In this document: positions 45,890 to 64,000 of the stretch, in pieces
Layout: every line of letters begins with the position of its first letter
Position numbering within the stretch: the first letter of the stretch is position 1
Source: Mytilus trossulus
Lineage: Eukaryota
Direction: 5' to 3'
Length of the DNA stretch: 64,000 bases
Assembly (NCBI RefSeq): GCF_036588685.1
Contig: NW_026963317.1
Span: 1,550,001 to 1,614,000 of the forward strand
Position numbers and translations under genes: made by a program
Notes under the pieces: generated by a model
Databases searched by the model: none
Told to the model about the DNA's origin: nothing
Seen by the model: the letters and a program-made list of their open reading frames with translations, nothing else

Positions 45890-47898
45890 GAGATTCTGAA
45901 AAAGGAAATCACCAATTCACCAACATTCCAACTGACTCCATTTTCAGAAAACGAAATCTGTAACTTTTAGCCACCGCTTTACAAGCAGAGCCAAATACAA
46001 TGAAAGTCCCAACTATGTATTGGCTTCCGAAGCTACACAAAACCCCTTACAAATATAGATTTATTTCGTCTTCAAGCCATTGTTCAACTACTAAATTGTC
46101 TATTCTTCTTACCAGCACACTTGGTACAATTAAAAACCTTATAATAAATTGTTCAAATAAGGCCTTCGAAAATAGTGGAATAAATTACTTTTGGAGTGTC
46201 AAGAACTCGTTGGAAGTACTTGATAAATTGCATGCTTATATTGGTGATTTTGAATCTGTTCAAAGTTTTGATTTTTCTACCCTGTATACCACATTGCCTC
46301 ACATTCTCATTAAGAAAAAATTCACACACCTAATTAAGTGGGCATTCAAAAAATCAGAATGTGAATATATATGTTCAAACTCTTTTAGGTAATTTTTTAG
46401 TAGCAATAAACAAAAAAACTATGTTAATTGGACATGCTTTGATAATATATATGCCCTTGAATTTTTACTAGATAACATTTTTGTTCGCTTTGGGGATTCC
46501 GTATATCGTCAGATTATCGGAATTCCAATGGGGACTAACTGTGCACCACTTATCGCGGACCTCTTTTTGTATTGTTATGAGTTACAATTTATGACAAAAA
46601 TAAGCAAAGACCCATCAAAACAACATCTAATAAACAAATTTAATAATACTTTTAGATATTTGGATGACATTTTGGCTTTCAATAATGACGACTTCAGTAT
46701 GTATATTAATGAAATTTATCCTGGTGAACTTACTTTAAATAAAGCTAATGCTAACAATGACCACTGCCCTCTCCTCGATCTTGACATCTATATCACTAAC
46801 GGAAAGCTGAATACTAAAATTTATGATAAAAAGGAAGATTTTTCATTTCCTATCGTTAATTATCCGTTTTTAGATGGTGACGTTCCCTTGTCACCATCTT
46901 ACGGTGTTTATATATATCAACTTGTACGATTCGTTCGTGTATGTAACAATGTTTTAGATTTTAACGAGAGAAATTTATGTATTACTGAAAAATTATTACA
47001 CCAGGGTTTTCGATATCACAAACTAGTCAAAACATTTACTAAATTTTATCATCGGTATAAAGACATCATTCGTAAATATAGCTCAACATGCAGACTTCTT
47101 ATACGTTCAGGTATTTAACATCCCATTTTTTATGGAAATATTCTTTATAAAGCACAACGGTGTCAGTATTCACCTCATAAACTTACAAAACCTTTGAATA
47201 GACTTTGAAGGGATATAATTACGATACTGTTGTCAAGTCATTAAAGATTGCATATTTTGGCGTTAATATTGAGTCACTGATAAGGTCTTTGCGTCGGAAC
47301 TAAACACATTTGTTCTAAAAACAGTTGTTGGCATGGCACGGGTTATGTTCTTCTCGTATATGTTATGATGGTATGATACTAAACCCCTAACGGGAAGGAT
47401 TGTGCCTGATGTTCATATGATGTAATCATAATCTTTCAGTCAGTTAAATTGAAGTCTGGAGCTGGCATGTCAGTTAACTGCTAGTAGTCTATTGTTATTT
47501 ATGTATTATTGTCATTTTGTTTATTTTCTTTGGTTACATCTTCTGACATCAGTCTCGGACTTCTCTTGAACTGAATTTTAATGTGCGTATTGTTATGCGT
47601 TTACTCACAAACATGTTTAACCCCGCCGCATTTTTGCGCCTGTCCCAAGTCAGGAGCCTCTGGCCTTTGTTAGTCTTGTATTATTTTAATTCTAGTTTTT
47701 GTGTACAATTTGGAAATTAGTATGGCGTTCATTATCACTGAACTAGTATATATTTGTTTAGGGGCCAGCTGAAGGACGCCTCCGGGTGCGGGAATTTCTC
47801 GCTACATTGAAGACCTGTTGGTGACCTTCTGCTGTTGTTTTTTTATTTGGTCGGGTTGTTGTCTCTTTGACACATTCCCCATTTCCATTCTCAATTTT
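45890..47898 (+). mobile_element. 5'-truncated Penelope-like retroelement
   Basis: Reverse transcriptase frame followed by a ~600-bp 3' tail whose reverse complement recurs at about 53363-53770 and 61796-62205, with shorter or older pieces near 18130-18520 and 31763. Confidence 0.85.
46000..47303 (+). pseudogene. Penelope-type reverse transcriptase, disrupted
   Basis: MYWLPKLHKTP, SFDFSTLYT, QIIGIPMGTNCAPLIADLFL, FRYLDDI, LLDLDI, TKIYDK. ORFs 46000-46392 and 46528-47118 share one frame, with in-frame TAA at 46390 and 47116 and a frameshift near 47205. Confidence 0.88.
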
Positions 47899-48559
47899 AA
47901 ATCAAAAACCATACAAGACTAACATGAATTTCAAAATCAGAGGCTTCTGACTTGGGACAAGCGCAAAAATAAGACGGGTTAAACATGTTTTGTGAGATCT
48001 TGTTCAACCCTACCCTATAGCTATACTAGCCAATGTAGAATAAAGAAACACATATAGCAATAAACAGATAACAAAATTATGAAGTTAATATGATCTAATA
48101 TGAAGATAGCGAATTTGATAGATGGTGACATATTTGAGGACAGTATCGTTAACAAATTCTGTACATAAAAAAAACCTGCAGATGCAATTTTTTTCCATAA
48201 CTTGTGACATTTGACAATTTTTGATATGTATTAGAATAAATCCAATTTCAAGAAATGTTTCAGAACATTTGAATATTATGACAATATGTCTGTTCAATTG
48301 TTGAACTTGATATGACGAACTATGTACTGAATCTGTATGATACAAAATTCCAATAACTTTAACTTCTCCTATTTTCTATTTTGATATGTCCAGCTTATAA
48401 TGATCATGTTCCGCACAGCGAAACGCATACAAGAGAAATTGACCGTAACTCTTTGATAATCAATGATCTTTTCTTCGTCTTTAATTGTGATTCACTAGAA
48501 ATGACAAATATTTGTGGTTCAGTGTTTGTATCATTTTTTAACCATAAGTCATTTACTAT

Positions 48560-48661
48560 CAATCTAATTTAAAAAAAAATATTGATCTCTGATTACGTTA
48601 TACTACATATGAGCTCACATGTAGTATAACGTAATCAGAGATCAATATTTTAATTAGATTG
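48560..48661. mobile_element. 102-bp fold-back MITE with 9-bp TSD
   Basis: ATTTACTAT|CAATCTAATT ... AATTAGATTG|ATTTACTAT; the interior is almost wholly palindromic around GAGCTC. Confidence 0.88.
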
Positions 48662-49495
48662 ATTTACTATTAAAGTGAATATTTTATAAAGGTTTCTTTT
48701 ACAAGGAATTGTATATACTATACAAATCATTGGTTTAAAAAAAAAATCTTATCAAGTTTTTTTCTCAGTGACTTGTAGCAAGAGAACATCTGAAGTCAGC
48801 GACGAAACATTTTCAGTTTTTTTCTTATTTTCCAAAAAATATATATAAAAATCTATCATCTCATATTTTATTACAAAATCATTGGGTAATTTTGAACATT
48901 TTTTTTTAAGAAGAAAAAACATAGTGAAAAATCTACATGTTGACTAAGTTATAGACGTGTAATACCCATAGACTGATTTGGGTTTGACATCTATGACTAA
49001 GTATATTATAAGAACATTTTATCTGATGAAACTGAACTTTATTAAAAGCAGGGAAATTTTCAAATTTGACAAAATATTTATAGCATAGTATAAGCGCGAA
49101 ACTATGATGCCTTGGCCGTTCAAGACTTAATAAAATCTGTAAAAAAAAATGATAAAAACCTCCTCGAATTCCGTGGAAAAAAACCTTGCTTATTTCCAGT
49201 TTTGTTCCGGATACTAGAAAAGGGAATATTATCTCCCCTTGTACAACAAAATTTGCGGGAAATCACAGTGCCAGTTTACAAACTTTGTAACACGCTAAAA
49301 AATGGGTGTAAGTTTAGTAATTATTTTTGTTTCACACTTTTTTGATATGCAATAATGTTGGCTTCTTTGAAAACAGTTCATTCTTCTTCCTTGTAGCACT
49401 AGAAGTAGAAAGTGTGGACACCCAAAGTGAAACAAAAAAATAGGTTTTCTTCTATTCAGCCATCGCATGTTTAGGCTTGGACTAGTACTATTATG

Positions 49496-49695
49496 CGGGG
49501 GGATAGGAGGGGTCCTGATCCCGAAATCCCGGGCTTTAAAACACGAAATCCCGAGGTCCCGAATTTAAATAAAGTAAATCCCGACGTCCCGAAATTCGAA
49601 AACAACAATTCCCGGATCCTGAAAGGATCAATCCCGAAATCCCGAGCTTAAAAACACCCGATCCCGTAGTCTCGATAAAGGTCCTATCCCCCTCT
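49496..49695. mobile_element. MITE with ATCCCG subrepeats
   Basis: GCGGGGGGATAGGA ... TCCTATCCCCCTC ends; many (A)ATCCCG copies; reverse-orientation relative at about 12609-12945. Confidence 0.65.
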
Positions 49696-52600
49696 ATTAT
49701 ACTTGACCCAGGTGTAAGGTTCCCTTCTTAAAAATATTAGGTAGACCCTCTTACAGGTAACACTGGTAGACCTATTTGGCAAATGACCGCGATTTTTGGC
49801 AAATCTCCGCGGAACGGATAAAAAATAGGGGTTTATCGTAAATTTTCCGTTTTACAAAATAGTTTGCGGTTCTCCGGAGATTTTCCGTGTCTCAGGGAAT
49901 TATCCGTTTGTCCGATTAAACTGGTGTGTATTGAGTCAGTGATAGAACCAGTGATGCGTGAGCGACGGTTATTAATAGATCGTTGTATAATCCGTTATCT
50001 GTGAGCAGCGGTTATTAATAGATCGTTGTGATTATATACACTGTTTACAGTCAGATAAAAATAACCGTCTTATTACCCTTTTCAGTCGAGAAATAAAAAT
50101 CGGTGGTTTTGATATTAAAGTTACTTGCAATTTAAATATCGAATTTAGTTCAATAAAGAATAATCTATTTAAATGTGACCAATGAACAGGAAAATGCACG
50201 TGGTAACTTTGCAATACTACAAATATGTTCACCTTACAAAATTCTTCTTTATTGTCATGTTAAGATAAATCAGTTCCTGTAAAAACAGTAAAAACAGGGT
50301 CTTAATTACTGCAGATGCCGTAATCCGACATAATGTCATACTGATTTGACACTTGTCTAGTGTGAGTAACACCTGCTGTGATATTTTTGCAATACAACAT
50401 GGACAAGCGGAAGGTCATAACTCAATCTGTTGATCCGAATTTAACTTTACCTGTATAGATATTTATTTATGGAGGATATCATAGATACATTTAATAAATT
50501 ATATTGTATTCAATGGAGATAATTTAAATACACAATATAATTTATTCAGACATATTTGCAGGTATACATTGAACATGTTTATTCCAAGGTTTGATATTGA
50601 ATGCTTTTTTTTTTTTTTTTTTTTTTTATCAAACTTCGATCTGATCAGTCTCATAGATTATAAACGAGTAATTCGTTTATAGTTACACATTGTTACTCTT
50701 CTAACGTCTTTTTCTTTGTGCTATTAAAAAAAACCTCCCAATTTTCCACATCAGATCGACATTTATATATATATGAATACTGGAAATCTTTTTTCCGTCC
50801 AACACCACGCTCCCCACAAGAGCCCCAAGATATAATCATACCTGTCAATCACTAGCCGCAAGTTGAACATTTTGGTCAGCCTTCCTCGTGCTTTCAATTA
50901 TGACATCGTTGCGAATTTATTTTTTTTAAAATTGACATGTGAAAAGAATAAAGTGATGGGAAGTTTATTTTACGACCTGTCAGAAATTCTTGTGATTCTA
51001 ATAAGATTTTTCTCAGGCCGCATTTCTTTCTAACAAGAATTTTGTAAACGTTGTGTCGCGTGTGTTACTGTTTTCTAAACGATACACGAGTAGAAACAAA
51101 TACATCGTTTGATAAATCTTTAATGACCCTGTTTGAATTTTCAATAATGCATGCACATGTTGTTGGTAATCAGACTTTTTTACAAACGTAGAAACAACTT
51201 GAATACTTCGTTTAATCAGGTTGAAGTTAGAGACAAATGGAGCGTTTGTACTAACAAACGACAAACTGCAGAAGCATTTTTAGCGTTTGCATAGTTTGTC
51301 AAAGTTTATGTAAACTTTGCAAACGTATGTTTGAAAGAAATGATCAAAACATGTGCGAGCTTAGCCGTTTGCATATTTTGTGTTAGAAAGAAATGCATCT
51401 TTACACTGGTAGACCTATTTGGCAAATGACCGCGATTTTTGGCAAATCTCCGCGGAACGGATAAAAAATAGGGGTTTATCGTAAATTTTCCGTTTTACAG
51501 AATAGTTTGCGGTTCTCCGGAGATTTTCCGTGTCTCAGGGAATTATCCGTTTGTCCGATTAAACTGGTGTGTATTGAGTCAGTGATAGAACCAGTGATGC
51601 GTGAGCGACGGTTATTAATAGATCGTTGTATAATCCGTTATCTGTGAGCAGCGGTTATTAATAGATCGTTGTGATTATATACACTGTTTACAGTCAGATA
51701 AAAATAACCGTCTTATTACCCTTTTCAGTCGAGAAATAAAAATCGGTGGTTTTGATATTAAAGTTACTTGCAATTTAAATATCGAATTTAGTTCAATAAA
51801 GAATAATCTATTTAAATGTGACCAATGAACAGGAAAATGCACGTGGTAACTTTGCAATACTACAAATATGTTCACCTTACAAAATTCTTCTTTATTGTCA
51901 TGTTAAGATAAATCAGTTCCTGTAAAAACAGTAAAAACAGGGTCTTAATTACTGCAGATGCCGTAATCCGACATAATGTCATACTGATTTGACACTTGTC
52001 TAGTGTGAGTAACACCTGCTGTGATATTTTTGCAATACAACATGGACAAGCGGAAGGTCATAACTCAATCTGTTGATCCGAATTTAACTTTACCTGTATA
52101 GATATTTATTTATGGAGGATATCATAGATACATTTAATAAATTATATTGTATTCAATGGAGATAATTTAAATACACAATATAATTTATTCAGACATATTT
52201 GCAGGTATACATTGAACATGTTTATTCCAAGGTTTGATATTGAATGCTTTTTTTTTTTTTTTTTTTTTTTATCAAACTTCGATCTGATCAGTCTCATAGA
52301 TTATAAACGAGTAATTCGTTTATAGTTACACATTGTTACTCTTCTAACGTCTTTTTCTTTGTGCTATTAAAAAAAACCTCCCAATTTTCCACATCAGATC
52401 GACATTTATATATATATGAATACTGGAAATCTTTTTTCCGTCCAACACCACGCTCCCCACAAGAGCCCCAAGATATAATCATACCTGTCAATCACTAGCC
52501 GCAAGTTGAACATTTTGGTCAGCCTTCCTCGTGCTTTCAATTATGACATCGTTGCGAATTTATTTTTTTTAAAATTGACATGTGAAAAGAATAAAGTGAT

Positions 52601-53362
52601 GGGAAGTTTATTTTACGACCTGTCAGAAATTCTTGTGATTCTAATAAGATTTTTCTCAGGCCGCATTTCTTTCTAACAAGAATTTTGTAAACGTTGTGTC
52701 GCGTGTGTTACTGTTTTCTAAACGATACACGAGTAGAAACAAATACATCGTTTGATAAATCTTTAATGACCCTGTTTGAATTTTCAATAATGCATGCACA
52801 TGTTGTTGGTAATCAGACTTTTTTACAAACGTAGAAACAACTTGAATACTTCGTTTAATCAGGTTGAAGTTAGAGACAAATGGAGCGTTTGTACTAACAA
52901 ACGACAAACTGCAGAAGCATTTTTAGCGTTTGCATAGTTTGTCAAAGTTTATGTAAACTTTGCAAACGTATGTTTGAAAGAAATGATCAAAACATGTGCG
53001 AGCTTAGCCGTTTGCATATTTTGTGTTAGAAAGAAATGCATCTTTAATGAGTCTGAATCCGTAACCGTCAAAATAGCATGCTTTACAAAAAGATCAGCCA
53101 ATTCAAACGTTTCTTTACACAAAGATGATTTTAAGTACGTCATACATTACATGTAAATTAAACATTTATTTAAGTAAATTTGTTTGTGTATCTATCTTTT
53201 TTTGTATCTATCAATTTGGTTACAGGGTTGTACCGTGTGGTGCGTTTTCAGATTCATTTCTCAACAACTTCCTGTGAACCGAAATATTTCGGCAGGGGTA
53301 TCAACGGCGGCAAGCTTACAGTTTAACTTGCTTAAATTTTATTTAAGTCAGTTTATTGAAAT

Positions 53363-53770
53363 AAAATTGAAAATGGAAATGGGGAATGTGTCAAAGAGAT
53401 AGCAACCCGACCATAGAAAAACAGCAGCAGAAGGTCACCAACGGGTCTTCAATGTAGCGAGAAACTCCCGCGCCCGAAGGCGTCCTTCAGCTGGCCCCTA
53501 AACAAATATGAACGCCATACTAATTTCCAAATTGTACACAAGAAACTAAAATTAGAATAATACAAGACTAACAAAGGCCAGAGGCTCCTGACTTGGGACA
53601 GGCGGGAAAATGCGGCGGGGTTAAACATGTTTATGAGATCTCAACCCCCCCTTTTACCTCTAGCCAATGTAGAAAAGTAAACGCATAACAATACGCACAT
53701 TTAAAATTCAGTTCTAAAGAAGTCCGAGTCTGATGTCAGAAGATTTAACCAGATAAAATAAACAAAATGA
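53363..53770 (-). mobile_element. Penelope-like element 3'-tail fragment (duplicated at about 61796-62205)
   Basis: Reverse complement of about 47508-47898 (AAAATTGAAAATGGAAATGGGGAATGTGTCAAAGAG ... CTGACTTGGGACAGGCG). Confidence 0.8.
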
Positions 53771-55419
53771 CATTGTTTTTGCAGAAGATTAATCCAGACA
53801 TTAACGTACTTTGGCTTCCTATTTGTTCCACTGTGTAGGATAACTTATTTACGCATTACATCATTAATAATTACCAATATTAAAATGCTGAAATGCAAGT
53901 TGTATACTTATTATTTTACTAATTTGCGTTTTGGTTCCGTTCAAATTTGCTGTTATATCATGTATAGATTCCTTGATTTTCATAACTTATCTAGTTTCAG
54001 TTGTTAAATACTAGTCAGTAAAGAGCTAAATATTTTGCCTTCCAGCAGAGCCAACAATTAAGCATCAGACGTATACGTGATACATTAATCATATATATAT
54101 GTAATATCATTATATATGATATCAGTAATGGACTCCTAGACTTTTTCTCCTTTTATAGACGACTATGCAGTATGGGCTGTGCTCATTGTTGAAGGCCGTA
54201 CGGTGACCTACATGTATAGTTGTTAATTTCTGTGGCATATGGTCTCTTATCCAGAGTTTTTCTCATTGGCAATCACACCACACCTTTTTTTTAAACGGAC
54301 TCTTTTAGATTTTGTTATATTCTCAACGGTTGAGAAAAACTCCATGGATGACAAGTCAACTGGGGTTTTGAGTTGAACATTTTGATGGTGTATGTTTATA
54401 AGGGTTTGAATAGGATTTATATAGAAGAAGAGAGAATATATATGGACAAAAAGTGCACAACAAAGGGCCAAAAAAGTAAATAAAATAGACACCAAGAAAA
54501 CAAAGAATATAGAATAGTGGGGAAAAATATGAAGACTACAGAAAAATTACTTACAACTATAAGACAATATTCAAGACCCTCGTGTGTGTTCAAATACAAT
54601 CTGTATACACTATAGTATATATCTTGCTATAAAGTTCCGTTCTCAATGTTATTTGCTCGAGCATGACTGTCTGATTCTATTTAATTTTTAAATTGATGTC
54701 CAGGGGCAAACATTTCTAGAGTCGTGTCATTCAGGAAGTAAATACAAGAATAAATGAATCTGTTCATGCGCGGGTTGGTTAAAATAGAGCTCCCTACATA
54801 CATCTTGTTTAAAAAATATTTATTTTACTCAGCTATCTTCAAGGCACTGTCTTCTGCTCTTACATGAAATAGTGATACTATGAAATTGACTGATAAGATT
54901 TTATTTTAGATTGCCAAAGTTTGAAGTAGTAGAGACCATTTCCGTGACCTGTGTTTGTTGCACTCTGTGGGTAAAATCCAGTAGTTTTTTTTTAGCCTAC
55001 TGAGATTTTAATAACTTATTTTCGAATGATGGAACCATATCAAAATAATAAATTGAACACGGGTTTGACAGTCAGTAAACTGTCACACAAGAAATAGATT
55101 GAATGTTGCATGTACACAAGTCCAATTTGTAATGTTGTCTTTACGTCCTTCCACATTCTTTTTTTTTTCAAAATTCGGGATCCGCTTTCGAATATATTAT
55201 GGGAGTCTGTCAATGGAGCTAGAGATACATTTAACTACCTTGACTGGTTACACAACCCTTGCACAGTAGATAAATACATCATACACAGATACACTGGCTG
55301 GTTAAAGGGACAATAAACCAGAAGTGTAAATTGCCCCAGGTATTTTAAGTATATTGTGTGTAATGTGTCAACAGCCACGTGTTAGTGAATTCAAAGATAA
55401 TCAAAATGATCTAATACAC

Positions 55420-55464
55420 CTGAGACAACTATAACACATATAGTATGTGTTATAGTAGTCTCAG
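55420..55464. mobile_element. 45-bp hairpin insertion with 7-bp flanking duplication (duplicate at 63853-63897; relative at 42031-42060)
   Basis: AATACAC|CTGAGACAACTATAACACATA-TAG-TATGTGTTATAGTAGTCTCAG|AATACAC. Confidence 0.75.
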
Positions 55465-55544
55465 AATACACGTAGTAATCTACCATGCAGCTACGCATCA
55501 TCGAACATCGCAAATAACTAGCTTTGCATTGTAAGATATTTAAT

Positions 55545-55892
55545 TATACCCCCGCTTTGAAAAAAAGGGGGTATACTGTTTTACCTCTGTCTGTCCTTCC
55601 TTCCGTCAGTCCGTCAGTCCATCCGTCCGTCAGTCTGTCAGTCAGTCCGTCCGTCCCATGAATATTTTTTGTCAGGAACTACACTACCAGGATTTCTGAA
55701 ATTTGGTTTCAGGCTTGATATAAGTCAGTTATACTTTGTACTTGATGCGTTTTCAGATAAATCACTCAACAACTTCCTGTTTACCGAACACTTGATTGAT
55801 TTTACACATGATAGCCAAGTTGAAAATTTTTCTCAGGAACTACAATACAAGGATTTCTGAAATTTGGTTTAATATAAGTCAGCTATACCGTG
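55545..55892 (+). mobile_element. HINE/DINE-1-like element fragment
   Basis: TTATACCCC..GGGGTATA subterminal inverted repeat, (TCCG/TCAG)n microsatellite, then two copies of a core repeat (TCAGGAACTACA..GGATTTCTGAAATTTGGTTT). Confidence 0.7.
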
Positions 55893-58800
55893 GTATTACC
55901 AAGGTCTGTCGTTTTTAACTGTTTATATGGGAATTGGTGAAAAAGTCATAGTTCAAAGTCATAAATGAGCGTAAATAAGTGTTCCGTGAAAATTGTTTTC
56001 GAAAATCTAATTTGTTCATAATTCTTTTATGTAATAATATTCGTAACTTCCCTGGTCTGATCACCAGCATGGCTAAAGGTATTACTCCCAAATGTATTGT
56101 GAGGTGACACGTTCAGGTATTCAAGCGATTTCCTGTCGGACTTGCAAGTTCATGCATCGCTTCACTTCTAAGGGTATTGATCAGTGTATACGACCGATAA
56201 CTTGAAACTTTCCATTTTGAACTATCAGGTGTATAGTATAAATCTCTGTCTTGCGTGTCCGATATACTAGTCATTACTAAACGCATAAGCTTGTTTATAA
56301 ATTACATTTCTGGTGTAAAGGATATTATTTATAAAAATCTAAATAATTCCAAAAAAAAAAAGATTTGATAAAATAAAAATCTGTTTTCACATTTTTTCCA
56401 AGGGTAAATTTGGGGAAATGTAAGTACTCGTTCTCAAAAGTGAAGGACAGTTTGAAACATACAAGAAATATTGATTTAACAAAAATATACGCACTTATAG
56501 ACCATTCTTTTATACGCCTTGATAGAAAGTTACGGAACTATAGATAGTTGCAATTCAAAATTATATAAATTGCTTGTTACACCCTCAGCTGCCACTATAT
56601 GTAATGCTAAAATTGAAAGAAAAAATTGTTTTCGACTTGTCGCGAAAAAAATAGTTTGTTTTTCGCCACAGGCGAAAAAAAAAGTTTGTACAGAAAAAAA
56701 AACATAGCCCCCCCCCCCGAAAATCAAATGGTTGCTGCCTAATGTGCAATGATGTGAACATGGTTCTGAAAGTACATTATGCCAAATTTCCTGTTCCGAC
56801 ATGCATGTTATTTATGCCACTGGACAAACACTAATTATCCCCAAGGGATGTGAATATTTTGCTGGAAAACTATTGAGTATCAAAGTTTCAAATTAATTTC
56901 GGGATTTATTTTCCTTCTTGGTATTCAATATTCAATAACAGAAACAAGAATAAACTGCTTGTCCGCTAAATAGGGGTATTTTATAGTTATATTAAAAAAT
57001 AGGGATATATGACATTAAATTGGTTCTGTCTTTTTTTAAACATCGTTAAAAAGATGTGTGTCTAAGGTGAACGACACAAGAACCCTGTAATACTAGTACG
57101 AGAGAATAGCATGTAAACATTCCTTCTCAATAATATGGTTGTATTGGAAATCTTGTCATACAGATTGACAACTCATGGTCCGATATGCATGTAATATTTG
57201 CCACATGACGCCCATAGTTCTTTCTACCATCATCAACTTATTCTTTGATATTGCTGTAAACATCGATGGTTCACACCCAAACAAAATGGGAGTAATGTAC
57301 CTTCTGATAGCTTCTCCGTGTTATACACTTGTGAAACTTAATATATAGACGAAATTTCGGTATTGAAATGAATCTACATCTCACAAACAGGATTTTTAAA
57401 TAACGATTTTGAGCAATCGTTGTAGGTTCATGAATATTCATATGGTGCTTTTCTTTAGCGCCAATTGGAAAAAACGTATCTTTAAATAAAGTTTGCAGTA
57501 TTAAACATATTCCTCAGAAATCAGTTATCATAAAACCATACGAGTTATGATAAACCTTGATAAAACACAGTTCTGTTATCATAAAACATAAAAGAATGCA
57601 CTATGTAAACTGGAGTAAAATTATGAGACAGTTCTAAGCACTGTACATGTACTATAGTAAAGTTGTAAGTCTGTTCTGTCACAAAACTTGTAAGCGATGG
57701 TCCATGCAGTTATATTCATGTCTGGGAATGTCCTTGGCTGTTTATCCAAAAGATATAGTCTGGTTTTTTTCTGTTTCCCATCGTTTTTTTGAGAAATGCA
57801 TTTAAGAGTGAATCGTTAACTGGGTAAAGACCAGTGGCAAATATCTCTCTGTACGTTCTGTCGATTTGGGAAGATATTTTCTAATTCATTTGAAAATATC
57901 TATATATGTGTTTGCAATGTTCAATGCTTGGACTTTGAAAAGGCACTAATAAAGCTAACTAAATATTATTTTGATAAAAAAGCGGCAATACAACAAATTT
58001 AATTTTTCAAACAAATAATTCTGTAAACATCGCGTGTGAGGGTTTACACGGAGTTAAAAGAAAAGACAACAGGGCAAATCTGATGAAAAAAAAATCCAGA
58101 AAATTCATAGTAACAGGAAATTAAACAGTAATTGAAACCCCCTCATCAAACAAATGTACCTCATGACCTGTATTATGCTGAGGTACAATTTTTTTGGTGA
58201 AAAAAATATAGAATGCTGGAAGTGTTTCGATGTGCTATTGGAAAATCCTTTGAAAAAATTGGTAGGGTTCACCAGGCCACGGCTTAGGTAGCACTTCACA
58301 GAAAATATAGTTACAATTGAGCCACAGCATGTTTAATAACCTTCCAACCCTGGCCTTCTAATACGTTAGGCCAACTGTTAGTGTCATACATGCAAAACTA
58401 CAGACCTATCTACGGAGTGCTACCATACTCACATGCTCCCGATACTAGTATGCTGAAGAAGTAATGAAATTAATAGAACCAGAGCCGGATTTAGTGGGGA
58501 ATGGGGTTGATGGGAGTTTTTAATAGTCTTGATTTGATTGATTGATATACATGGAAGTTTTTAACGACACTGACTCAATGACTGGCTATACAACACATAG
58601 AAGTTTTTGACGACATTGACTGCCTAAACAGCCCTTTGAGTTTCTCAGTCGGCTATAAAGGGGGAATGACACGGTGTCCGCCCCCTTTTGTTGAAAAATA
58701 AATATTGATTATATAGGGAATCACTTAGGAATGACTGGAGCTGGTCCTCTCATGAAATTATCAGTTAGTCTCCCCTCTCCTTATGTATAAAAAAATCTGG

Positions 58801-59098
58801 ATCTGCCACTGAAAACAAGTTTAATAAATTAAAAAAAAGAATGTGTCACTAGTATACACGGATGCCCAATCCGCACTATCATTTTCTATGTTTAACAGAC
58901 CTGGGACTTTCTTTACTTAGTATAGAAGGTCCCTGAGTGGACTGAGGAAATGAGGTAATTCTAATTTGGCATTAAATTTAGAAAGATCATATCATTGTGA
59001 ACATGTGTACTAAGTTTAAAATTGATCATTGTTGATTGGATATCAACTTCATCAAACACTACCTCGACCAAAAACTTCAACCTGACGCGGGACAGACG

Positions 59099-59309
59099 TG
59101 TCACGGAATAGAAGTTCCTTCATAATATAAGTTCCGAATGGAAAAACTATTCTGGAATATTATTTCCACAGGAATAAATATTACAGTAGATGTTCCTAAC
59201 GGAATAAATAGTATAGAATATTTGTTCCAACAGGTACAGGTATTATGACATTGTTTATAATAAAGTTTCCACTGGAACTTCTGTTAGGTGGAACAAATAT
59301 ACGTTGACA
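59099..59309. mobile_element. Possible TGT..ACA (Ginger-like) MITE nested in a minus-strand HINE-like repeat
   Basis: GACG|TGTCA ... TGACA|GATG, with internal GGAA(T/C)A/GTTCC subrepeats, interrupting a GACA/AACG microsatellite. Confidence 0.4.
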
Positions 59310-62300
59310 GATGGACCAACGAACAAACGAACAGACAGACCAGAAACAATGCTGAGAATTGAACATCCTAAGTATATATTTTTAATCTTTATTGCAAAAT
59401 TACACCCATAAGGGTCAAGCAATATAAACAAACATTTGTAAATACAATGTAATATAAGGTAATCTTATACACTCCCAGTCCTGAAACACAAACAAAATTA
59501 AAAGTCATCTGATTGCAATCTTATAACTGTTAATACTGATGAAGTCGCTTTATCATTGATTTATAAGATACAAGTTGTGACCTTCGAAATTGTTTTATAT
59601 TATTTTATTTGTATATTTTCCTATAGACTTTTAAGGTACCTCCGTTGTCCTTAAAAAAATCCCTTCCATAATATCCAAAACTTCATCGTTGATTTGAAAA
59701 AAAAATGATTTTAGATTTTCGATTATCAATTGAAATGAACCTACTAGAGCCTCAACTTTCAAGCGCACAATAATGTCAATCATTACACATCACTTTAACC
59801 CTGAATTGACATTCCACAATCGGTCAGTATATAACATCACCTGTGTTTATAGTTACAGGGTATTTCCCGCCGTTGGAAAATCCCGTGCAGTCGACACAAT
59901 TGATTTTTAACATTCTCTATCATGAGCGAGGTCAAGTTTTAGATCAAGTTAATTACATATATTTTTAACGTTAATTATTTAATTATTAAAAAAAAAACGT
60001 ATCATCATTTCTTTTCTTTTCTTTTTTTTTGCTAGTATAGTAAATATATCTCAGTCCCGGAATGTAGATACACTTAAATTTAGACCTGGAAGTGCCTTCT
60101 TATAAATGGAGAAACTGTCTTTCACATTAAAATTTAAAACAATATTATCGCTCAGGCATATTTTAAATTTGGAATAAGATGATTGATTGTTGGTTGTTTA
60201 ACTTCCAGTGGCAAATATTCCATAAATGCCAGGACGAACTTAGTTTTAAGATCGAACTCTCAAAAAATAATTGAAAAACAGTAATGATGACAGAAGAACT
60301 TTAATACGTGTGAAATAACTATTCAATCTTTTAAATATAACTTATTTATATTTCAAAAAGTAACAGATTAGTTTACAAGACGTGCATTGACGTACTTTCA
60401 TATCTTTAAAATGGAACTTCTTTGTCTAAAAGACGACCCACGAGTTGTCGAAATCCAGTTGCATGCATACTATATACATACATATGCATATTATGCATCG
60501 ACGATCGTTGTATTACGTTACATACTGCTATACCAATTGACCCCTGATATCAACTAAGGTTAGAACTTCCTATAGGCCGTTCATTTTATTTTTGTTCCAA
60601 TAAACGGTTCTTGAATCAATTATAATTTCTGAAGTATTTACGATGAAAGCATTATTCTAAAATCGTCTTACACAATGATAAAATTGTATTTATACCACAA
60701 TTGAAAAGTTATTTAATAAAACAAATGACAGATGAACTGATTAATTATAAAGATGAATGTATGTCCATATGCTCATATATATACACATTCGGACTAAAAT
60801 TCGCAACTTGTCATTATCTCATCGTAGCATATTGTTAATGTTGCTAATATATGCCTTCAACCCCAAGAGGTATAAATGTGCATTTCATTCTGAAAGATTA
60901 ATGGATCAGCAGGTGATCAAGATCGTTTTAAAAATTCCTATTTGCCAATGAAGTTTAAATGATCTTCGGCCTCAGACATACACATGTATTTTTCAATCAT
61001 AAAAGTAAACCTTTAACCCCGAGAAATATATAATCTGTTTCTCTCTAAATTTACAGAAACATTATGTGATAAATTTTTGAAAATTCCGTATATCTCAATC
61101 GATTAATGATAGTTCTGTAAACTTCTACATATATTACAATCTGTACCTCAATACAACCGTCCCTCACACTTAACGGATAATACAACGATCAATTAATGAT
61201 TGAACGTCGCTCACGCATAACGGATTATACAACCGACCTTTTAATAACCGTCACTCACGCATCACTGGTTCTATCAATGACTCAATACACACCCGTTTTA
61301 TCGGACAAACGGATAATTCCCTGAGACACGGAAAATCTCCGGAGAACCGCAAAATATTCTGTAAAACGGAAAATCTACGATGAACCTCTATTTATTATCC
61401 GTTCCGCGGAGATTGGCCAAAAAACACCGAATATTTTACAAAAATCGCGGTGATTTGCCAAATAGGTCTGCCAGTGTTAATGAGTCTGAATCCGTAACCG
61501 TCAAAATAGCATGCTTTACAAAAAGATCAGCCAATTCAAACGTTTCTTTACACAAAGATGATTTTAAGTACGTCATACATTACATGTAAATTAAACATTT
61601 ATTTAAGTAAATTTGTTTGTGTATCTATCTTTTTTTGTATCTATCAATTTGGTTACAGGGTTGTACCGTGTGGTGCGTTTTCAGATTCATTTCTCAACAA
61701 CTTCCTGTGAACCGAAATATTTCGGCAGGGGTATCAACGGCGGCAAGCTTACAGTTTAACTTGCTTAAATTTTATTTAAGTCAGTTTATTGAAATAAAAT
61801 TGAAAATGGAAATGGGGAATGTGTCAAAGAGATAGCAACCCGACCATAGAAAAACAGCAGCAGAAGGTCACCAACGGGTCTTCAATGTAGCGAGAAACTC
61901 CCGCGCCCGAAGGCGTCCTTCAGCTGGCCCCTAAACAAATATGAACGCCATACTAATTTCCAAATTGTACACAAGAAACTAAAATTAGAATAATACAAGA
62001 CTAACAAAGGCCAGAGGCTCCTGACTTGGGACAGGCGGGAAAATGCGGCGGGGTTAAACATGTTTATGAGATCTCAACCCCCCCTTTTACCTCTAGCCAA
62101 TGTAGAAAAGTAAACGCATAACAATACGCACATTTAAAATTCAGTTCTAAAGAAGTCCGAGTCTGATGTCAGAAGATTTAACCAGATAAAATAAACAAAA
62201 TGACATTGTTTTTGCAGAAGATTAATCCAGACATTAACGTACTTTGGCTTCCTATTTGTTCCACTGTGTAGGATAACTTATTTACGCATTACATCATTAA

Positions 62301-64000
62301 TAATTACCAATATTAAAATGCTGAAATGCAAGTTGTATACTTATTATTTTACTAATTTGCGTTTTGGTTCCGTTCAAATTTGCTGTTATATCATGTATAG
62401 ATTCCTTGATTTTCATAACTTATCTAGTTTCAGTTGTTAAATACTAGTCAGTAAAGAGCTAAATATTTTGCCTTCCAGCAGAGCCAACAATTAAGCATCA
62501 GACGTATACGTGATACATTAATCATATATATATGTAATATCATTATATATGATATCAGTAATGGACTCCTAGACTTTTTCTCCTTTTATAGACGACTATG
62601 CAGTATGGGCTGTGCTCATTGTTGAAGGCCGTACGGTGACCTACATGTATAGTTGTTAATTTCTGTGGCATATGGTCTCTTATCCAGAGTTTTTCTCATT
62701 GGCAATCACACCACACCTTTTTTTTAAACGGACTCTTTTAGATTTTGTTATATTCTCAACGGTTGAGAAAAACTCCATGGATGACAAGTCAACTGGGGTT
62801 TTGAGTTGAACATTTTGATGGTGTATGTTTATAAGGGTTTGAATAGGATTTATATAGAAGAAGAGAGAATATATATGGACAAAAAGTGCACAACAAAGGG
62901 CCAAAAAAGTAAATAAAATAGACACCAAGAAAACAAAGAATATAGAATAGTGGGGAAAAATATGAAGACTACAGAAAAATTACTTACAACTATAAGACAA
63001 TATTCAAGACCCTCGTGTGTGTTCAAATACAATCTGTATACACTATAGTATATATCTTGCTATAAAGTTCCGTTCTCAATGTTATTTGCTCGAGCATGAC
63101 TGTCTGATTCTATTTAATTTTTAAATTGATGTCCAGGGGCAAACATTTCTAGAGTCGTGTCATTCAGGAAGTAAATACAAGAATAAATGAATCTGTTCAT
63201 GCGCGGGTTGGTTAAAATAGAGCTCCCTACATACATCTTGTTTAAAAAATATTTATTTTACTCAGCTATCTTCAAGGCACTGTCTTCTGCTCTTACATGA
63301 AATAGTGATACTATGAAATTGACTGATAAGATTTTATTTTAGATTGCCAAAGTTTGAAGTAGTAGAGACCATTTCCGTGACCTGTGTTTGTTGCACTCTG
63401 TGGGTAAAATCCAGTAGTTTTTTTTTAGCCTACTGAGATTTTAATAACTTATTTTCGAATGATGGAACCATATCAAAATAATAAATTGAACACGGGTTTG
63501 ACAGTCAGTAAACTGTCACACAAGAAATAGATTGAATGTTGCATGTACACAAGTCCAATTTGTAATGTTGTCTTTACGTCCTTCCACATTCTTTTTTTTT
63601 TCAAAATTCGGGATCCGCTTTCGAATATATTATGGGAGTCTGTCAATGGAGCTAGAGATACATTTAACTACCTTGACTGGTTACACAACCCTTGCACAGT
63701 AGATAAATACATCATACACAGATACACTGGCTGGTTAAAGGGACAATAAACCAGAAGTGTAAATTGCCCCAGGTATTTTAAGTATATTGTGTGTAATGTG
63801 TCAACAGCCACGTGTTAGTGAATTCAAAGATAATCAAAATGATCTAATACACCTGAGACAACTATAACACATATAGTATGTGTTATAGTAGTCTCAGAAT
63901 ACACGTAGTAATCTACCATGCAGCTACGCATCATCGAACATCGCAAATAACTAGCTTTGCATTGTAAGATATTTAATTATACCCCCGCTTTGAAAAAAAG

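What the first reader, a model, noticed from the sequence alone, without database searches (positions are those of the whole stretch)
49761..64000. A 10-kb transposon inserted into a near-identical copy of itself
Seen: the apparent 1643-bp tandem duplication and the 8433-bp-offset duplication are one event. The inner element 51404-61476 is flanked by TTA|CACTGG..CCAGTG|TTA and itself carries the empty target GCATCT-TTA-ATGAGTC (TTA at 53044-53046). The outer copy starts at 49761, breaks at that same site and resumes at 61480. The copies differ by at least one base (A49857 vs G51500). Inference: very recent self-insertion, such as local hopping between sister chromatids, of a large non-autonomous element mobilised in trans.
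Basis: partly seen in the sequence, partly recalled or inferred. Interest (0 to 1): 0.8.

Follow-up and report, generated by a model that had tools for sequence, protein, structure and literature searches.

The report
Mussel CACTA transposon nested in itself
A 10-kb non-coding cut-and-paste (CACTA/EnSpm-type) transposon in a mollusc genome has jumped into a virtually identical copy of itself; this is a clean sign that the family moved very recently, but it is a known kind of event.

Summary
A 10,073-bp element (51404-61476; TTA|CACTGG…CCAGTG|TTA) sits in direct orientation at bases 1641-1643 of a second copy. That copy starts at 49761 and ends CCAGTG|TAA at window-equivalent 74447, matching TAA at 49758-60. 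The end lies 4,538 bp beyond the predicted 69,909 because the outer copy also carries an unrelated, abundant, non-coding ~4.5-kb element.

The two copies differ by one base in 10,073, and the outer A49857 is the derived state. The nearest other sampled copy is 0.5% diverged, and the family median is 1.4%.

A colinear homologous locus on contig C3 has the empty site with a single TAA. The family has about 44 copies. In 22 of 23 surveyed, the 3-bp target duplications are perfect and varied, so this is CACTA/EnSpm, not PIF/Harbinger.

The element has no ORF of 100 aa or more and no Pfam hit. One 35-kb element (C12) and its deletion derivative (C19) share the termini and carry Transposase_21 and DUF4218 exons, making C12 the candidate trans-acting source.

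The sister-chromatid origin remains an inference. Reads could not test the junctions because only short contigs were available. Earlier notes of this scan report other giant CACTA elements in this mussel genome. The event is real and recent but ordinary in kind.

The parts
49758..49760 (.). Left target-site duplication (TAA) of the outer element. Its partner TAA lies beyond the window at window-equivalent 74448-74450 (C42:1624448-50).
   Evidence: TAA|CACTGG… and …CCAGTG|TAA. The homologous C3 locus has one TAA between identical flanks.
49761..51403 (+). Left arm of the outer (recipient) copy: element bases 1-1643, the last three (51401-51403, TTA) being the left copy of the inner element's target duplication.
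   Evidence: identical to 51404-53046 except A49857 vs G51500. G is the state in other copies, so A is derived.
51404..61476 (+). Inner (inserted) copy, 10,073 bp: a complete non-autonomous CACTA/EnSpm-type element.
   Evidence: Searches give the boundaries. Searches show no ORF of 100 aa or more and no Pfam hit in the ten longest ORFs. One search finds no Rfam family.
51404..51441 (+). Left terminal inverted repeat (CACTGGTAGACCTATTTGGCAAAT…). It matches the right end at 36 of 38 bases. About 250 nt of subterminal inverted similarity (90%) follows, containing repeated TTATCCGTT and ATTTTCCGT motifs.
   Evidence: (I1, I14).
61439..61476 (-). Right terminal inverted repeat of the inner copy (…GGTCTGCCAGTG).
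53044..53046 (.). Unfilled TTA target site inside the inner copy (GCATCT-TTA-ATGAGTC): the position at which the outer copy was hit.
   Evidence: The same uninterrupted site is present in other copies.
61477..61479 (.). Right copy of the inner element's TTA target duplication.
61480..64000 (+). The outer copy resumes at element base 1644. It runs past the window to window-equivalent 74447 and is interrupted at 66204-70739 by an unrelated ~4.5-kb element. The whole composite is 24,687 bp.

Best explanation
This is a nested transposition. A 10,073-bp non-coding member of a young CACTA/EnSpm-type (CMC) family of about 44 copies was cut out and inserted, in the same orientation, into the TTA at bases 1641-1643 of a practically identical copy. 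That recipient copy already sat at a TAA site on this chromosome. The element cannot move itself. The likely transposase source is a 35-kb element on contig C12, which shares its termini and carries Transposase_21 and DUF4218 exons. After the copies separated, the outer copy gained one point mutation (A49857) and an insertion of an unrelated, abundant 4.5-kb element. Shown here: the anatomy, both target duplications, the empty site, the family and superfamily placement, the lack of coding capacity, and the near-identity of the two copies. Inferred: that the donor was the same locus on the sister chromatid or homologue (a 'local hop'), that the C12 element is functional, and that the event is recent in absolute time.
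For: Exact junctions and duplications are shown. The outer right end CCAGTG|TAA was found beyond the window. An empty site with a single TAA, and 67 nt of 100% identical left flank, lies at C3:10293866-68 in a locus colinear with the window over at least 68 kb. The pattern search found 87 termini genome-wide, and only this locus has the order L-L-R-R. In 22 of 23 copies the 3-bp TSDs are perfect and of 15 different sequences. In the right-terminal 2.2 kb, inner vs outer is 0/2200, the nearest other copies are 0.53% and 0.92% diverged, and the family median pairwise divergence is 1.4%. The C12 and C19 elements match the terminal 24 nt with 1 mismatch and the subterminal 190 nt at 80%. Their exons hit PF02992 (28.8 and 30.1 bits; cut-off 28.6) and PF13960 (30 bits; cut-off 27). 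Their C-terminal exon is homologous to a protein that carries DUF4218. Other copies lack the 4.5-kb insert, so it is an insertion in the outer copy and not a deletion in the inner one.
Against: No read-level support for the two nesting junctions could be obtained. The only runs served were short Logan contigs, and no listed piece bridges 51403/51404. Exact-pattern scans of metagenome contigs for both junctions were blank. Gene conversion between the nested direct repeats, or consensus polishing of the assembly, could make the copies look more alike than their true age warrants. Integrity and expression of the C12 transposase gene were not established; its two Transposase_21 exon hits are only just above Pfam's cut-off. 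The identity of the donor cannot be read from one assembly.
Confidence: 0.85

Rival explanations
1. The donor was an unlinked, near-identical copy that was excised and lost, or that lies in unassembled sequence. On this reading the event was not a hop from the sister chromatid or homologue of the recipient locus. The structure is still a nested transposition.
For: Cut-and-paste removes the donor, so its absence from the assembly is expected. The family contains other very close pairs (minimum pairwise divergence 0.23%). Copies lie on at least 17 contigs, so long-range movement is common.
Against: The inner copy differs from the outer by 1 in 10,073 bases, while every other sampled copy (22 of about 44 for the right-terminal 2.2 kb; all for the termini and one internal kilobase) is at least 0.5% diverged. 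The simplest source of a sequence identical to the outer copy is that copy itself.
Confidence: 0.3
2. The structure is an assembly artefact: a single 10-kb (or 14.6-kb) element was mis-assembled into a nested pair by a repeat-induced misjoin or chimeric reads.
For: The two copies are 100% identical over stretches of several kb, which is where assemblers err. C42 is an unplaced 4.5-Mb contig colinear with part of C3. Reads could not be used to check the junctions.
Against: A misjoin would not place a break exactly at both TIR tips with a duplicated TTA, at a site that is uninterrupted in the other copy and in other family members. The copies differ by a SNP and by a 4.5-kb insertion, so they were resolved as distinct sequences.
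Confidence: 0.04
3. The element belongs to PIF/Harbinger, as the TTA and TAA (TWA) duplications suggest, and is mobilised by a Harbinger transposase.
For: Both duplications at this locus, and those of two other copies (c4 TTA, c3 TAA), fit TWA.
Against: Across 23 copies the duplications include CAG, TGT, TAG, TGA, ATA, CTA, CTT, ATT, TAT, GAT, GTC, CAT and ACA. The termini are CACTG. The only coding elements that share the termini carry Transposase_21 and DUF4218, not DDE_Tnp_4.
Confidence: 0.02

Closest known systems
CACTA / EnSpm (CMC) DNA transposons and their non-autonomous derivatives (maize En/Spm-dSpm; animal CMC-EnSpm, Chapaev, Mirage)
   Same: CACTG termini, 3-bp target duplications without a fixed sequence, subterminal repeated motifs, and large size. 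A coding partner with Transposase_21 and DUF4218 shares the ends. Non-coding copies far outnumber the coding one.
   Different: The internal 10 kb is unrelated to the coding element apart from the ~250-bp ends and one ~270-bp patch. It is a mosaic of other mussel repeats rather than a simple deletion derivative. No second (TnpA-like) gene was tested here.
Double Ds of maize (a Ds inserted into a copy of itself) and local re-insertion of P, Ac and Sleeping Beauty elements. This comparison is from my own knowledge and was not checked in a paper here.
   Same: A cut-and-paste element is found inside another copy of the same element, which is taken as evidence of short-range re-insertion after replication.
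   Different: Double Ds is nested in inverted orientation and belongs to hAT (8-bp duplication). Here the orientation is direct, the superfamily is CACTA, the element is 10 kb, and the host is a bivalve.
Other giant CACTA-type elements reported by this scan in the same mussel genome (s1-829913, s1-823514)
   Same: Same genome, CACTG-type ends, elements tens of kb long, and one coding copy among many large non-coding relatives.
   Different: They lie on other pieces of the genome. I could not compare sequences, so whether they are the same family as the C12/C19 element is unknown.

Membership tests
CACTA / EnSpm (CMC) superfamily | Termini beginning CACT(A/G), in inverted repeat | tested here: met
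   CACTGG…CCAGTG at both nesting levels and at 87 termini genome-wide. The first 38 nt match at 36 of 38 bases between the ends.
CACTA / EnSpm (CMC) superfamily | 3-bp target-site duplication without strict sequence | tested here: met
   22 of 23 copies have perfect 3-bp duplications, of 15 different sequences. The empty site has a single TAA.
CACTA / EnSpm (CMC) superfamily | Subterminal repeated motifs within a few hundred bp of each end | tested here: inconclusive
   TTATCCGTT occurs 5 times and ATTTTCCGT 4 times in the terminal 400 nt of the two ends. No binding protein is known and no statistical control was run.
CACTA / EnSpm (CMC) superfamily | Autonomous member encodes a Transposase_21 (tnp2) DDE transposase with DUF4218 | tested here: met
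   The C12 element that shares the termini has exons hitting PF02992 (28.8 and 30.1 bits, cut-off 28.6) and PF13960 (30 bits, cut-off 27). The intactness of the whole gene was not shown.
PIF / Harbinger superfamily | 3-bp duplication of sequence TWA | tested here: not met
   Most copies have non-TWA duplications such as CAG, TGT, GTC and GAT.
PIF / Harbinger superfamily | DDE_Tnp_4 / Plant_tran transposase in the autonomous partner | tested here: not met
   The partner's exons hit Transposase_21 and DUF4218 only.
Self-nested ('double') cut-and-paste element | A complete copy with its own target duplication lies inside a second copy of the same family, and the interrupted site is intact in uninterrupted copies | tested here: met
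Self-nested ('double') cut-and-paste element | Junctions confirmed by reads from the individual | tested here: inconclusive
   Only short Logan contigs were available and none of the listed pieces bridges 51403/51404.

The most novel reading that the evidence does not exclude
The nested pair records a same-locus hop (sister chromatid or homologue) of a 10-kb non-coding CACTA element in the mussel germ line. The family would then be active now, driven by a single 35-kb master copy, and this locus would segregate as empty, single and nested alleles. That would give a natural system in a bivalve for studying how cut-and-paste elements gain copies.
Probability: 0.4. Interest if true: 0.45.

Novelty: new member of a known kind. 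Interest (0 to 1): 0.3.

Why it matters
The locus shows, with an internal control (the same site filled in one copy and unfilled in the other) and an external empty site, that a very large non-coding CACTA family has moved extremely recently in a mollusc genome. It also points to a single candidate transposase source. This is useful for annotating bivalve mobilomes, for interpreting the structural and hemizygous variation typical of mussels, and as a marker locus for testing ongoing DNA-transposon activity. It does not reveal a new mechanism.

Tried and rejected
- **Read support:** the one read-laying run (runs X1, X2, X7, X17) returned only short Logan contigs. No listed piece bridges 51403/51404, so the result is inconclusive, not negative.
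- **Metagenome scans:** exact-pattern scans of metagenome contigs for both nesting junctions were blank.
- **PIF/Harbinger reading:** rejected by the TSD survey.
- **Extra sequence in the 13-kb copies:** I first thought it might be the family's transposase. It is a nested Tc1/mariner (DDE_3).
- **Pfam on C19 exons:** at E≤0.01 these gave nothing. Only the fuller C12 element and a laxer threshold revealed Transposase_21 and DUF4218.
- **Representative search:** the 168-aa C-terminal exon found mostly short unannotated fragments. One (P0022) links it to DUF4218.
- **Coding and RNA checks:** Rfam on 47000-64000 gave nothing. Pfam on the ten longest ORFs of the inner copy gave nothing.
- **Tandem duplication or unequal crossing-over:** rejected because the breaks fall exactly at the TIR tips with a TTA duplication.
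- **Literature:** searches for self-insertion or double Ds returned nothing directly usable.
- **Earlier findings:** a search by sequence was blank.

Full report
**Observation**

The window is G000:C42:1550001-1614000 of a 1.3-Gb eukaryotic assembly with about 33% GC. A run list names a 'mollusc metagenome' among the holders of this stretch. Earlier notes of this scan call the genome a mussel. Fourteen contigs are chromosome-sized; that count is my inference from the contig lengths and hit coordinates seen.

Within the window, 49761-51403 equals 51404-53046 over 1,643 bp with one mismatch, A49857 vs G51500. Also, 53044-55567 equals 61477-64000 exactly. The inner element 51404-61476 is 10,073 bp and reads TTA|CACTGG…CCAGTG|TTA. 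The same site, unfilled (GCATCT-TTA-ATGAGTC), lies at 53044-46 inside it.

**Beyond the window**

I fetched C42:1599001-1629000.
- The outer copy continues 100% identical to inner 53044-57770, up to window-equivalent 66203.
- It is then interrupted by 4,536 bp plus a 2-bp TT ambiguity, a net addition of 4,538 bp (66204-70739).
- It resumes 100% identical to inner 57769-61476 and ends CCAGTG|TAA at 74447.

The end is shifted from 69,909 to 74,447 by the third insertion. The composite is 24,687 bp, and the junction sequence at 51403/4 is unique in the assembly.

**Empty site**

Both flanks of the outer copy hit C3:10.291-10.296 Mb on the minus strand. There the sequence reads …CTCTTACAGG-TAA-GTGGTATCCATATC…, with a single TAA at C3:10293866-68. 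The 67 nt to the left of the site are 100% identical to the window.

The window is colinear with C3 from about 10.29 to 10.33 Mb at 87-98% identity, with several indels. C42 is therefore either a retained divergent haplotype or a segmental duplicate of that region. Either way it supplies the pre-insertion state.

**Family**

The terminal 24-mer, allowing up to 2 mismatches, occurs 87 times, which means about 44 elements of 9.5-16 kb. Only this locus shows the order left-left-right-right. Copies of about 10 kb align end to end at about 98%. The ~13-kb copies add, among other extra segments, a nested Tc1/mariner with a DDE_3 ORF.

In 22 of 23 copies the 3-bp duplications are perfect, and they are of 15 different sequences. 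This rules out the TWA preference of PIF/Harbinger and fits CACTA/EnSpm. The first 38 nt of the two ends match at 36 of 38 bases. About 250 nt of subterminal sequence is inverted at 90% and holds repeated TTATCCGTT and ATTTTCCGT motifs.

**Coding capacity and candidate driver**

The 15 kb from 49000 to 64000 has no ORF of 100 aa or more. The ten longest ORFs of the inner copy have no Pfam hit, and there is no Rfam family.

Two elements carry a 1-mismatch variant of the terminal 24-mer at both ends:
- C12:9008939-9044018 is 35 kb with TSD ACA.
- C19:2692745-2712202 is 19.5 kb with TSD TGT. It is the same element with a 15.8-kb internal deletion.

They match our element only in the terminal ~250 bp (80%) and in one short internal patch.

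On their minus strand lie several transposase exons:
- Two exons hit Transposase_21, at 28.8 and 30.1 bits against a cut-off of 28.6.
- One exon hits DUF4218, at 30 bits against a cut-off of 27.
- A 168-aa C-terminal exon has a homologue, P0022, that carries DUF4218 just upstream of the matching region.

The DUF4218-region exon occurs at 99% identity only in these two elements. C12 is therefore the single candidate source of transposase. Whether its gene is intact and expressed was not shown.

**Age and direction**

In the right-terminal 2.2 kb the two nested copies are 0/2200 apart. The nearest others are 0.53% (C9:14.3 Mb) and 0.92% (C2:72.68 Mb) diverged. The median over all pairs is 1.4%.

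At the single differing base, the inner copy and three other copies have G, so A49857 in the outer copy is derived. The 4.5-kb insert is absent from the inner copy and from other family members. It belongs to an abundant young family, with 411 and 1,421 first-look candidates for its two ends.

Both differences are therefore changes in the outer copy that arose after the two copies diverged. Gene conversion between the direct repeats, or assembly polishing, could exaggerate the similarity.

**Mechanism**

Shown: a complete element was integrated by a transposase that makes 3-bp staggered cuts, into a TTA inside another copy.

Inferred: the donor was the same locus on a sister chromatid or homologue. 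The inner copy's closest relative by far is the outer copy, and cut-and-paste elements often re-insert nearby (own knowledge). An unlinked donor that has since been excised cannot be excluded.

An assembly artefact is unlikely, given the breaks at the TIR tips, the duplicated TTA and the distinguishing SNP and insertion. Read-level confirmation failed, however. Only short Logan contigs were served and none of the listed pieces bridges the junction. Two metagenome pattern scans were blank.

**Comparison and verdict**

The element meets the tested defining features of CACTA/EnSpm and fails those of PIF/Harbinger. Self-nesting of cut-and-paste elements is known (double Ds in maize, local re-insertion of P and Ac; own knowledge). 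CMC-EnSpm insertions are reported as polymorphic in oysters (bioRxiv 10.64898/2026.02.10.705023). This scan has already noted other giant CACTA elements in this genome.

The finding is real and well supported. It is a good marker of very recent activity of a 10-kb non-autonomous family, but it is a new member of a known kind and not a new mechanism.

Noticed in passing
Beyond the window: window-equivalent 66204-70739 = C42:1616204-1620739 (L010:7204 to L011:1739): A third, unrelated, non-coding ~4.5-kb element lies inside the outer copy only. Its left end AAAGGCAGT is inverted against ACTGCCTTT 17 nt before the right end, which is followed by a GCGCTTTCGCGC hairpin. All 7 copies examined sit directly after a T-run and are followed by TT, with no clear duplication. 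The family is abundant and young, and its 3' end is about 3 times more frequent than its 5' end. This looks like a Helitron2/Helentron-type non-autonomous element; that classification is from memory and was not tested.
   Followed up: partly
C12:9008939-9044018 (L020-L023) and C19:2692745-2712202 (L018-L019): A 35-kb CACTA element with ~700-bp inverted ends (91%) and Transposase_21/DUF4218 exons, together with its 15.8-kb deletion derivative. Both also carry a long 30-bp-period repeat that reads as PEPPVVE(A/P)EV in one frame (228-354 codons open).
   Followed up: partly
window 1-64000 vs C3:10.29-10.33 Mb: The window is colinear with a region of contig C3 (minus strand) at 87-98% identity with kb-scale indels. 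The 4.5-Mb contig C42 may be a retained alternative haplotype or a segmental duplication.
   Followed up: partly
window 49495-49693: A ~200-bp segment is absent from the C3 homologue. It holds 5 copies of an ATCCCGA-type 23-30-bp repeat, lies between inverted GGGGGGATAGG…CCTATCCCCC, and is flanked by CTATTAT on both sides. It is probably a small MITE insertion just upstream of the outer element. This interval has very high depth in the contig runs.
   Followed up: no
window 47510-47925 vs 53336-53772 (and 61769-62205): A ~430-bp repeat inside the element recurs, inverted, 2 kb upstream of the outer copy at 81-97%. In the Logan contigs this interval has summed depths of 10^5-10^6, so it is one of the most abundant repeats of these genomes.
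   Followed up: no
C10:43668941-43681553 and C10:43682414-43695026: Two copies of the family lie in tandem with a period of exactly 13,473 bp, with 860 bp between them. This looks like a tandem segmental duplication that includes flank, not nesting.
   Followed up: no
C2:13266086 (+) and C2:13334471 (-): Two left ends of the family face each other 68 kb apart, and no right end was found by the pattern search. Possible explanations are an inverted segmental duplication or the product of an aberrant transposition.
   Followed up: no
L012:3472-4227 (C4:73479472-73480227, minus strand): An open 251-aa Tc1/mariner transposase fragment (DDE_3, E=2.4e-14) is nested in the ~13-kb versions of the family.
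   Followed up: partly
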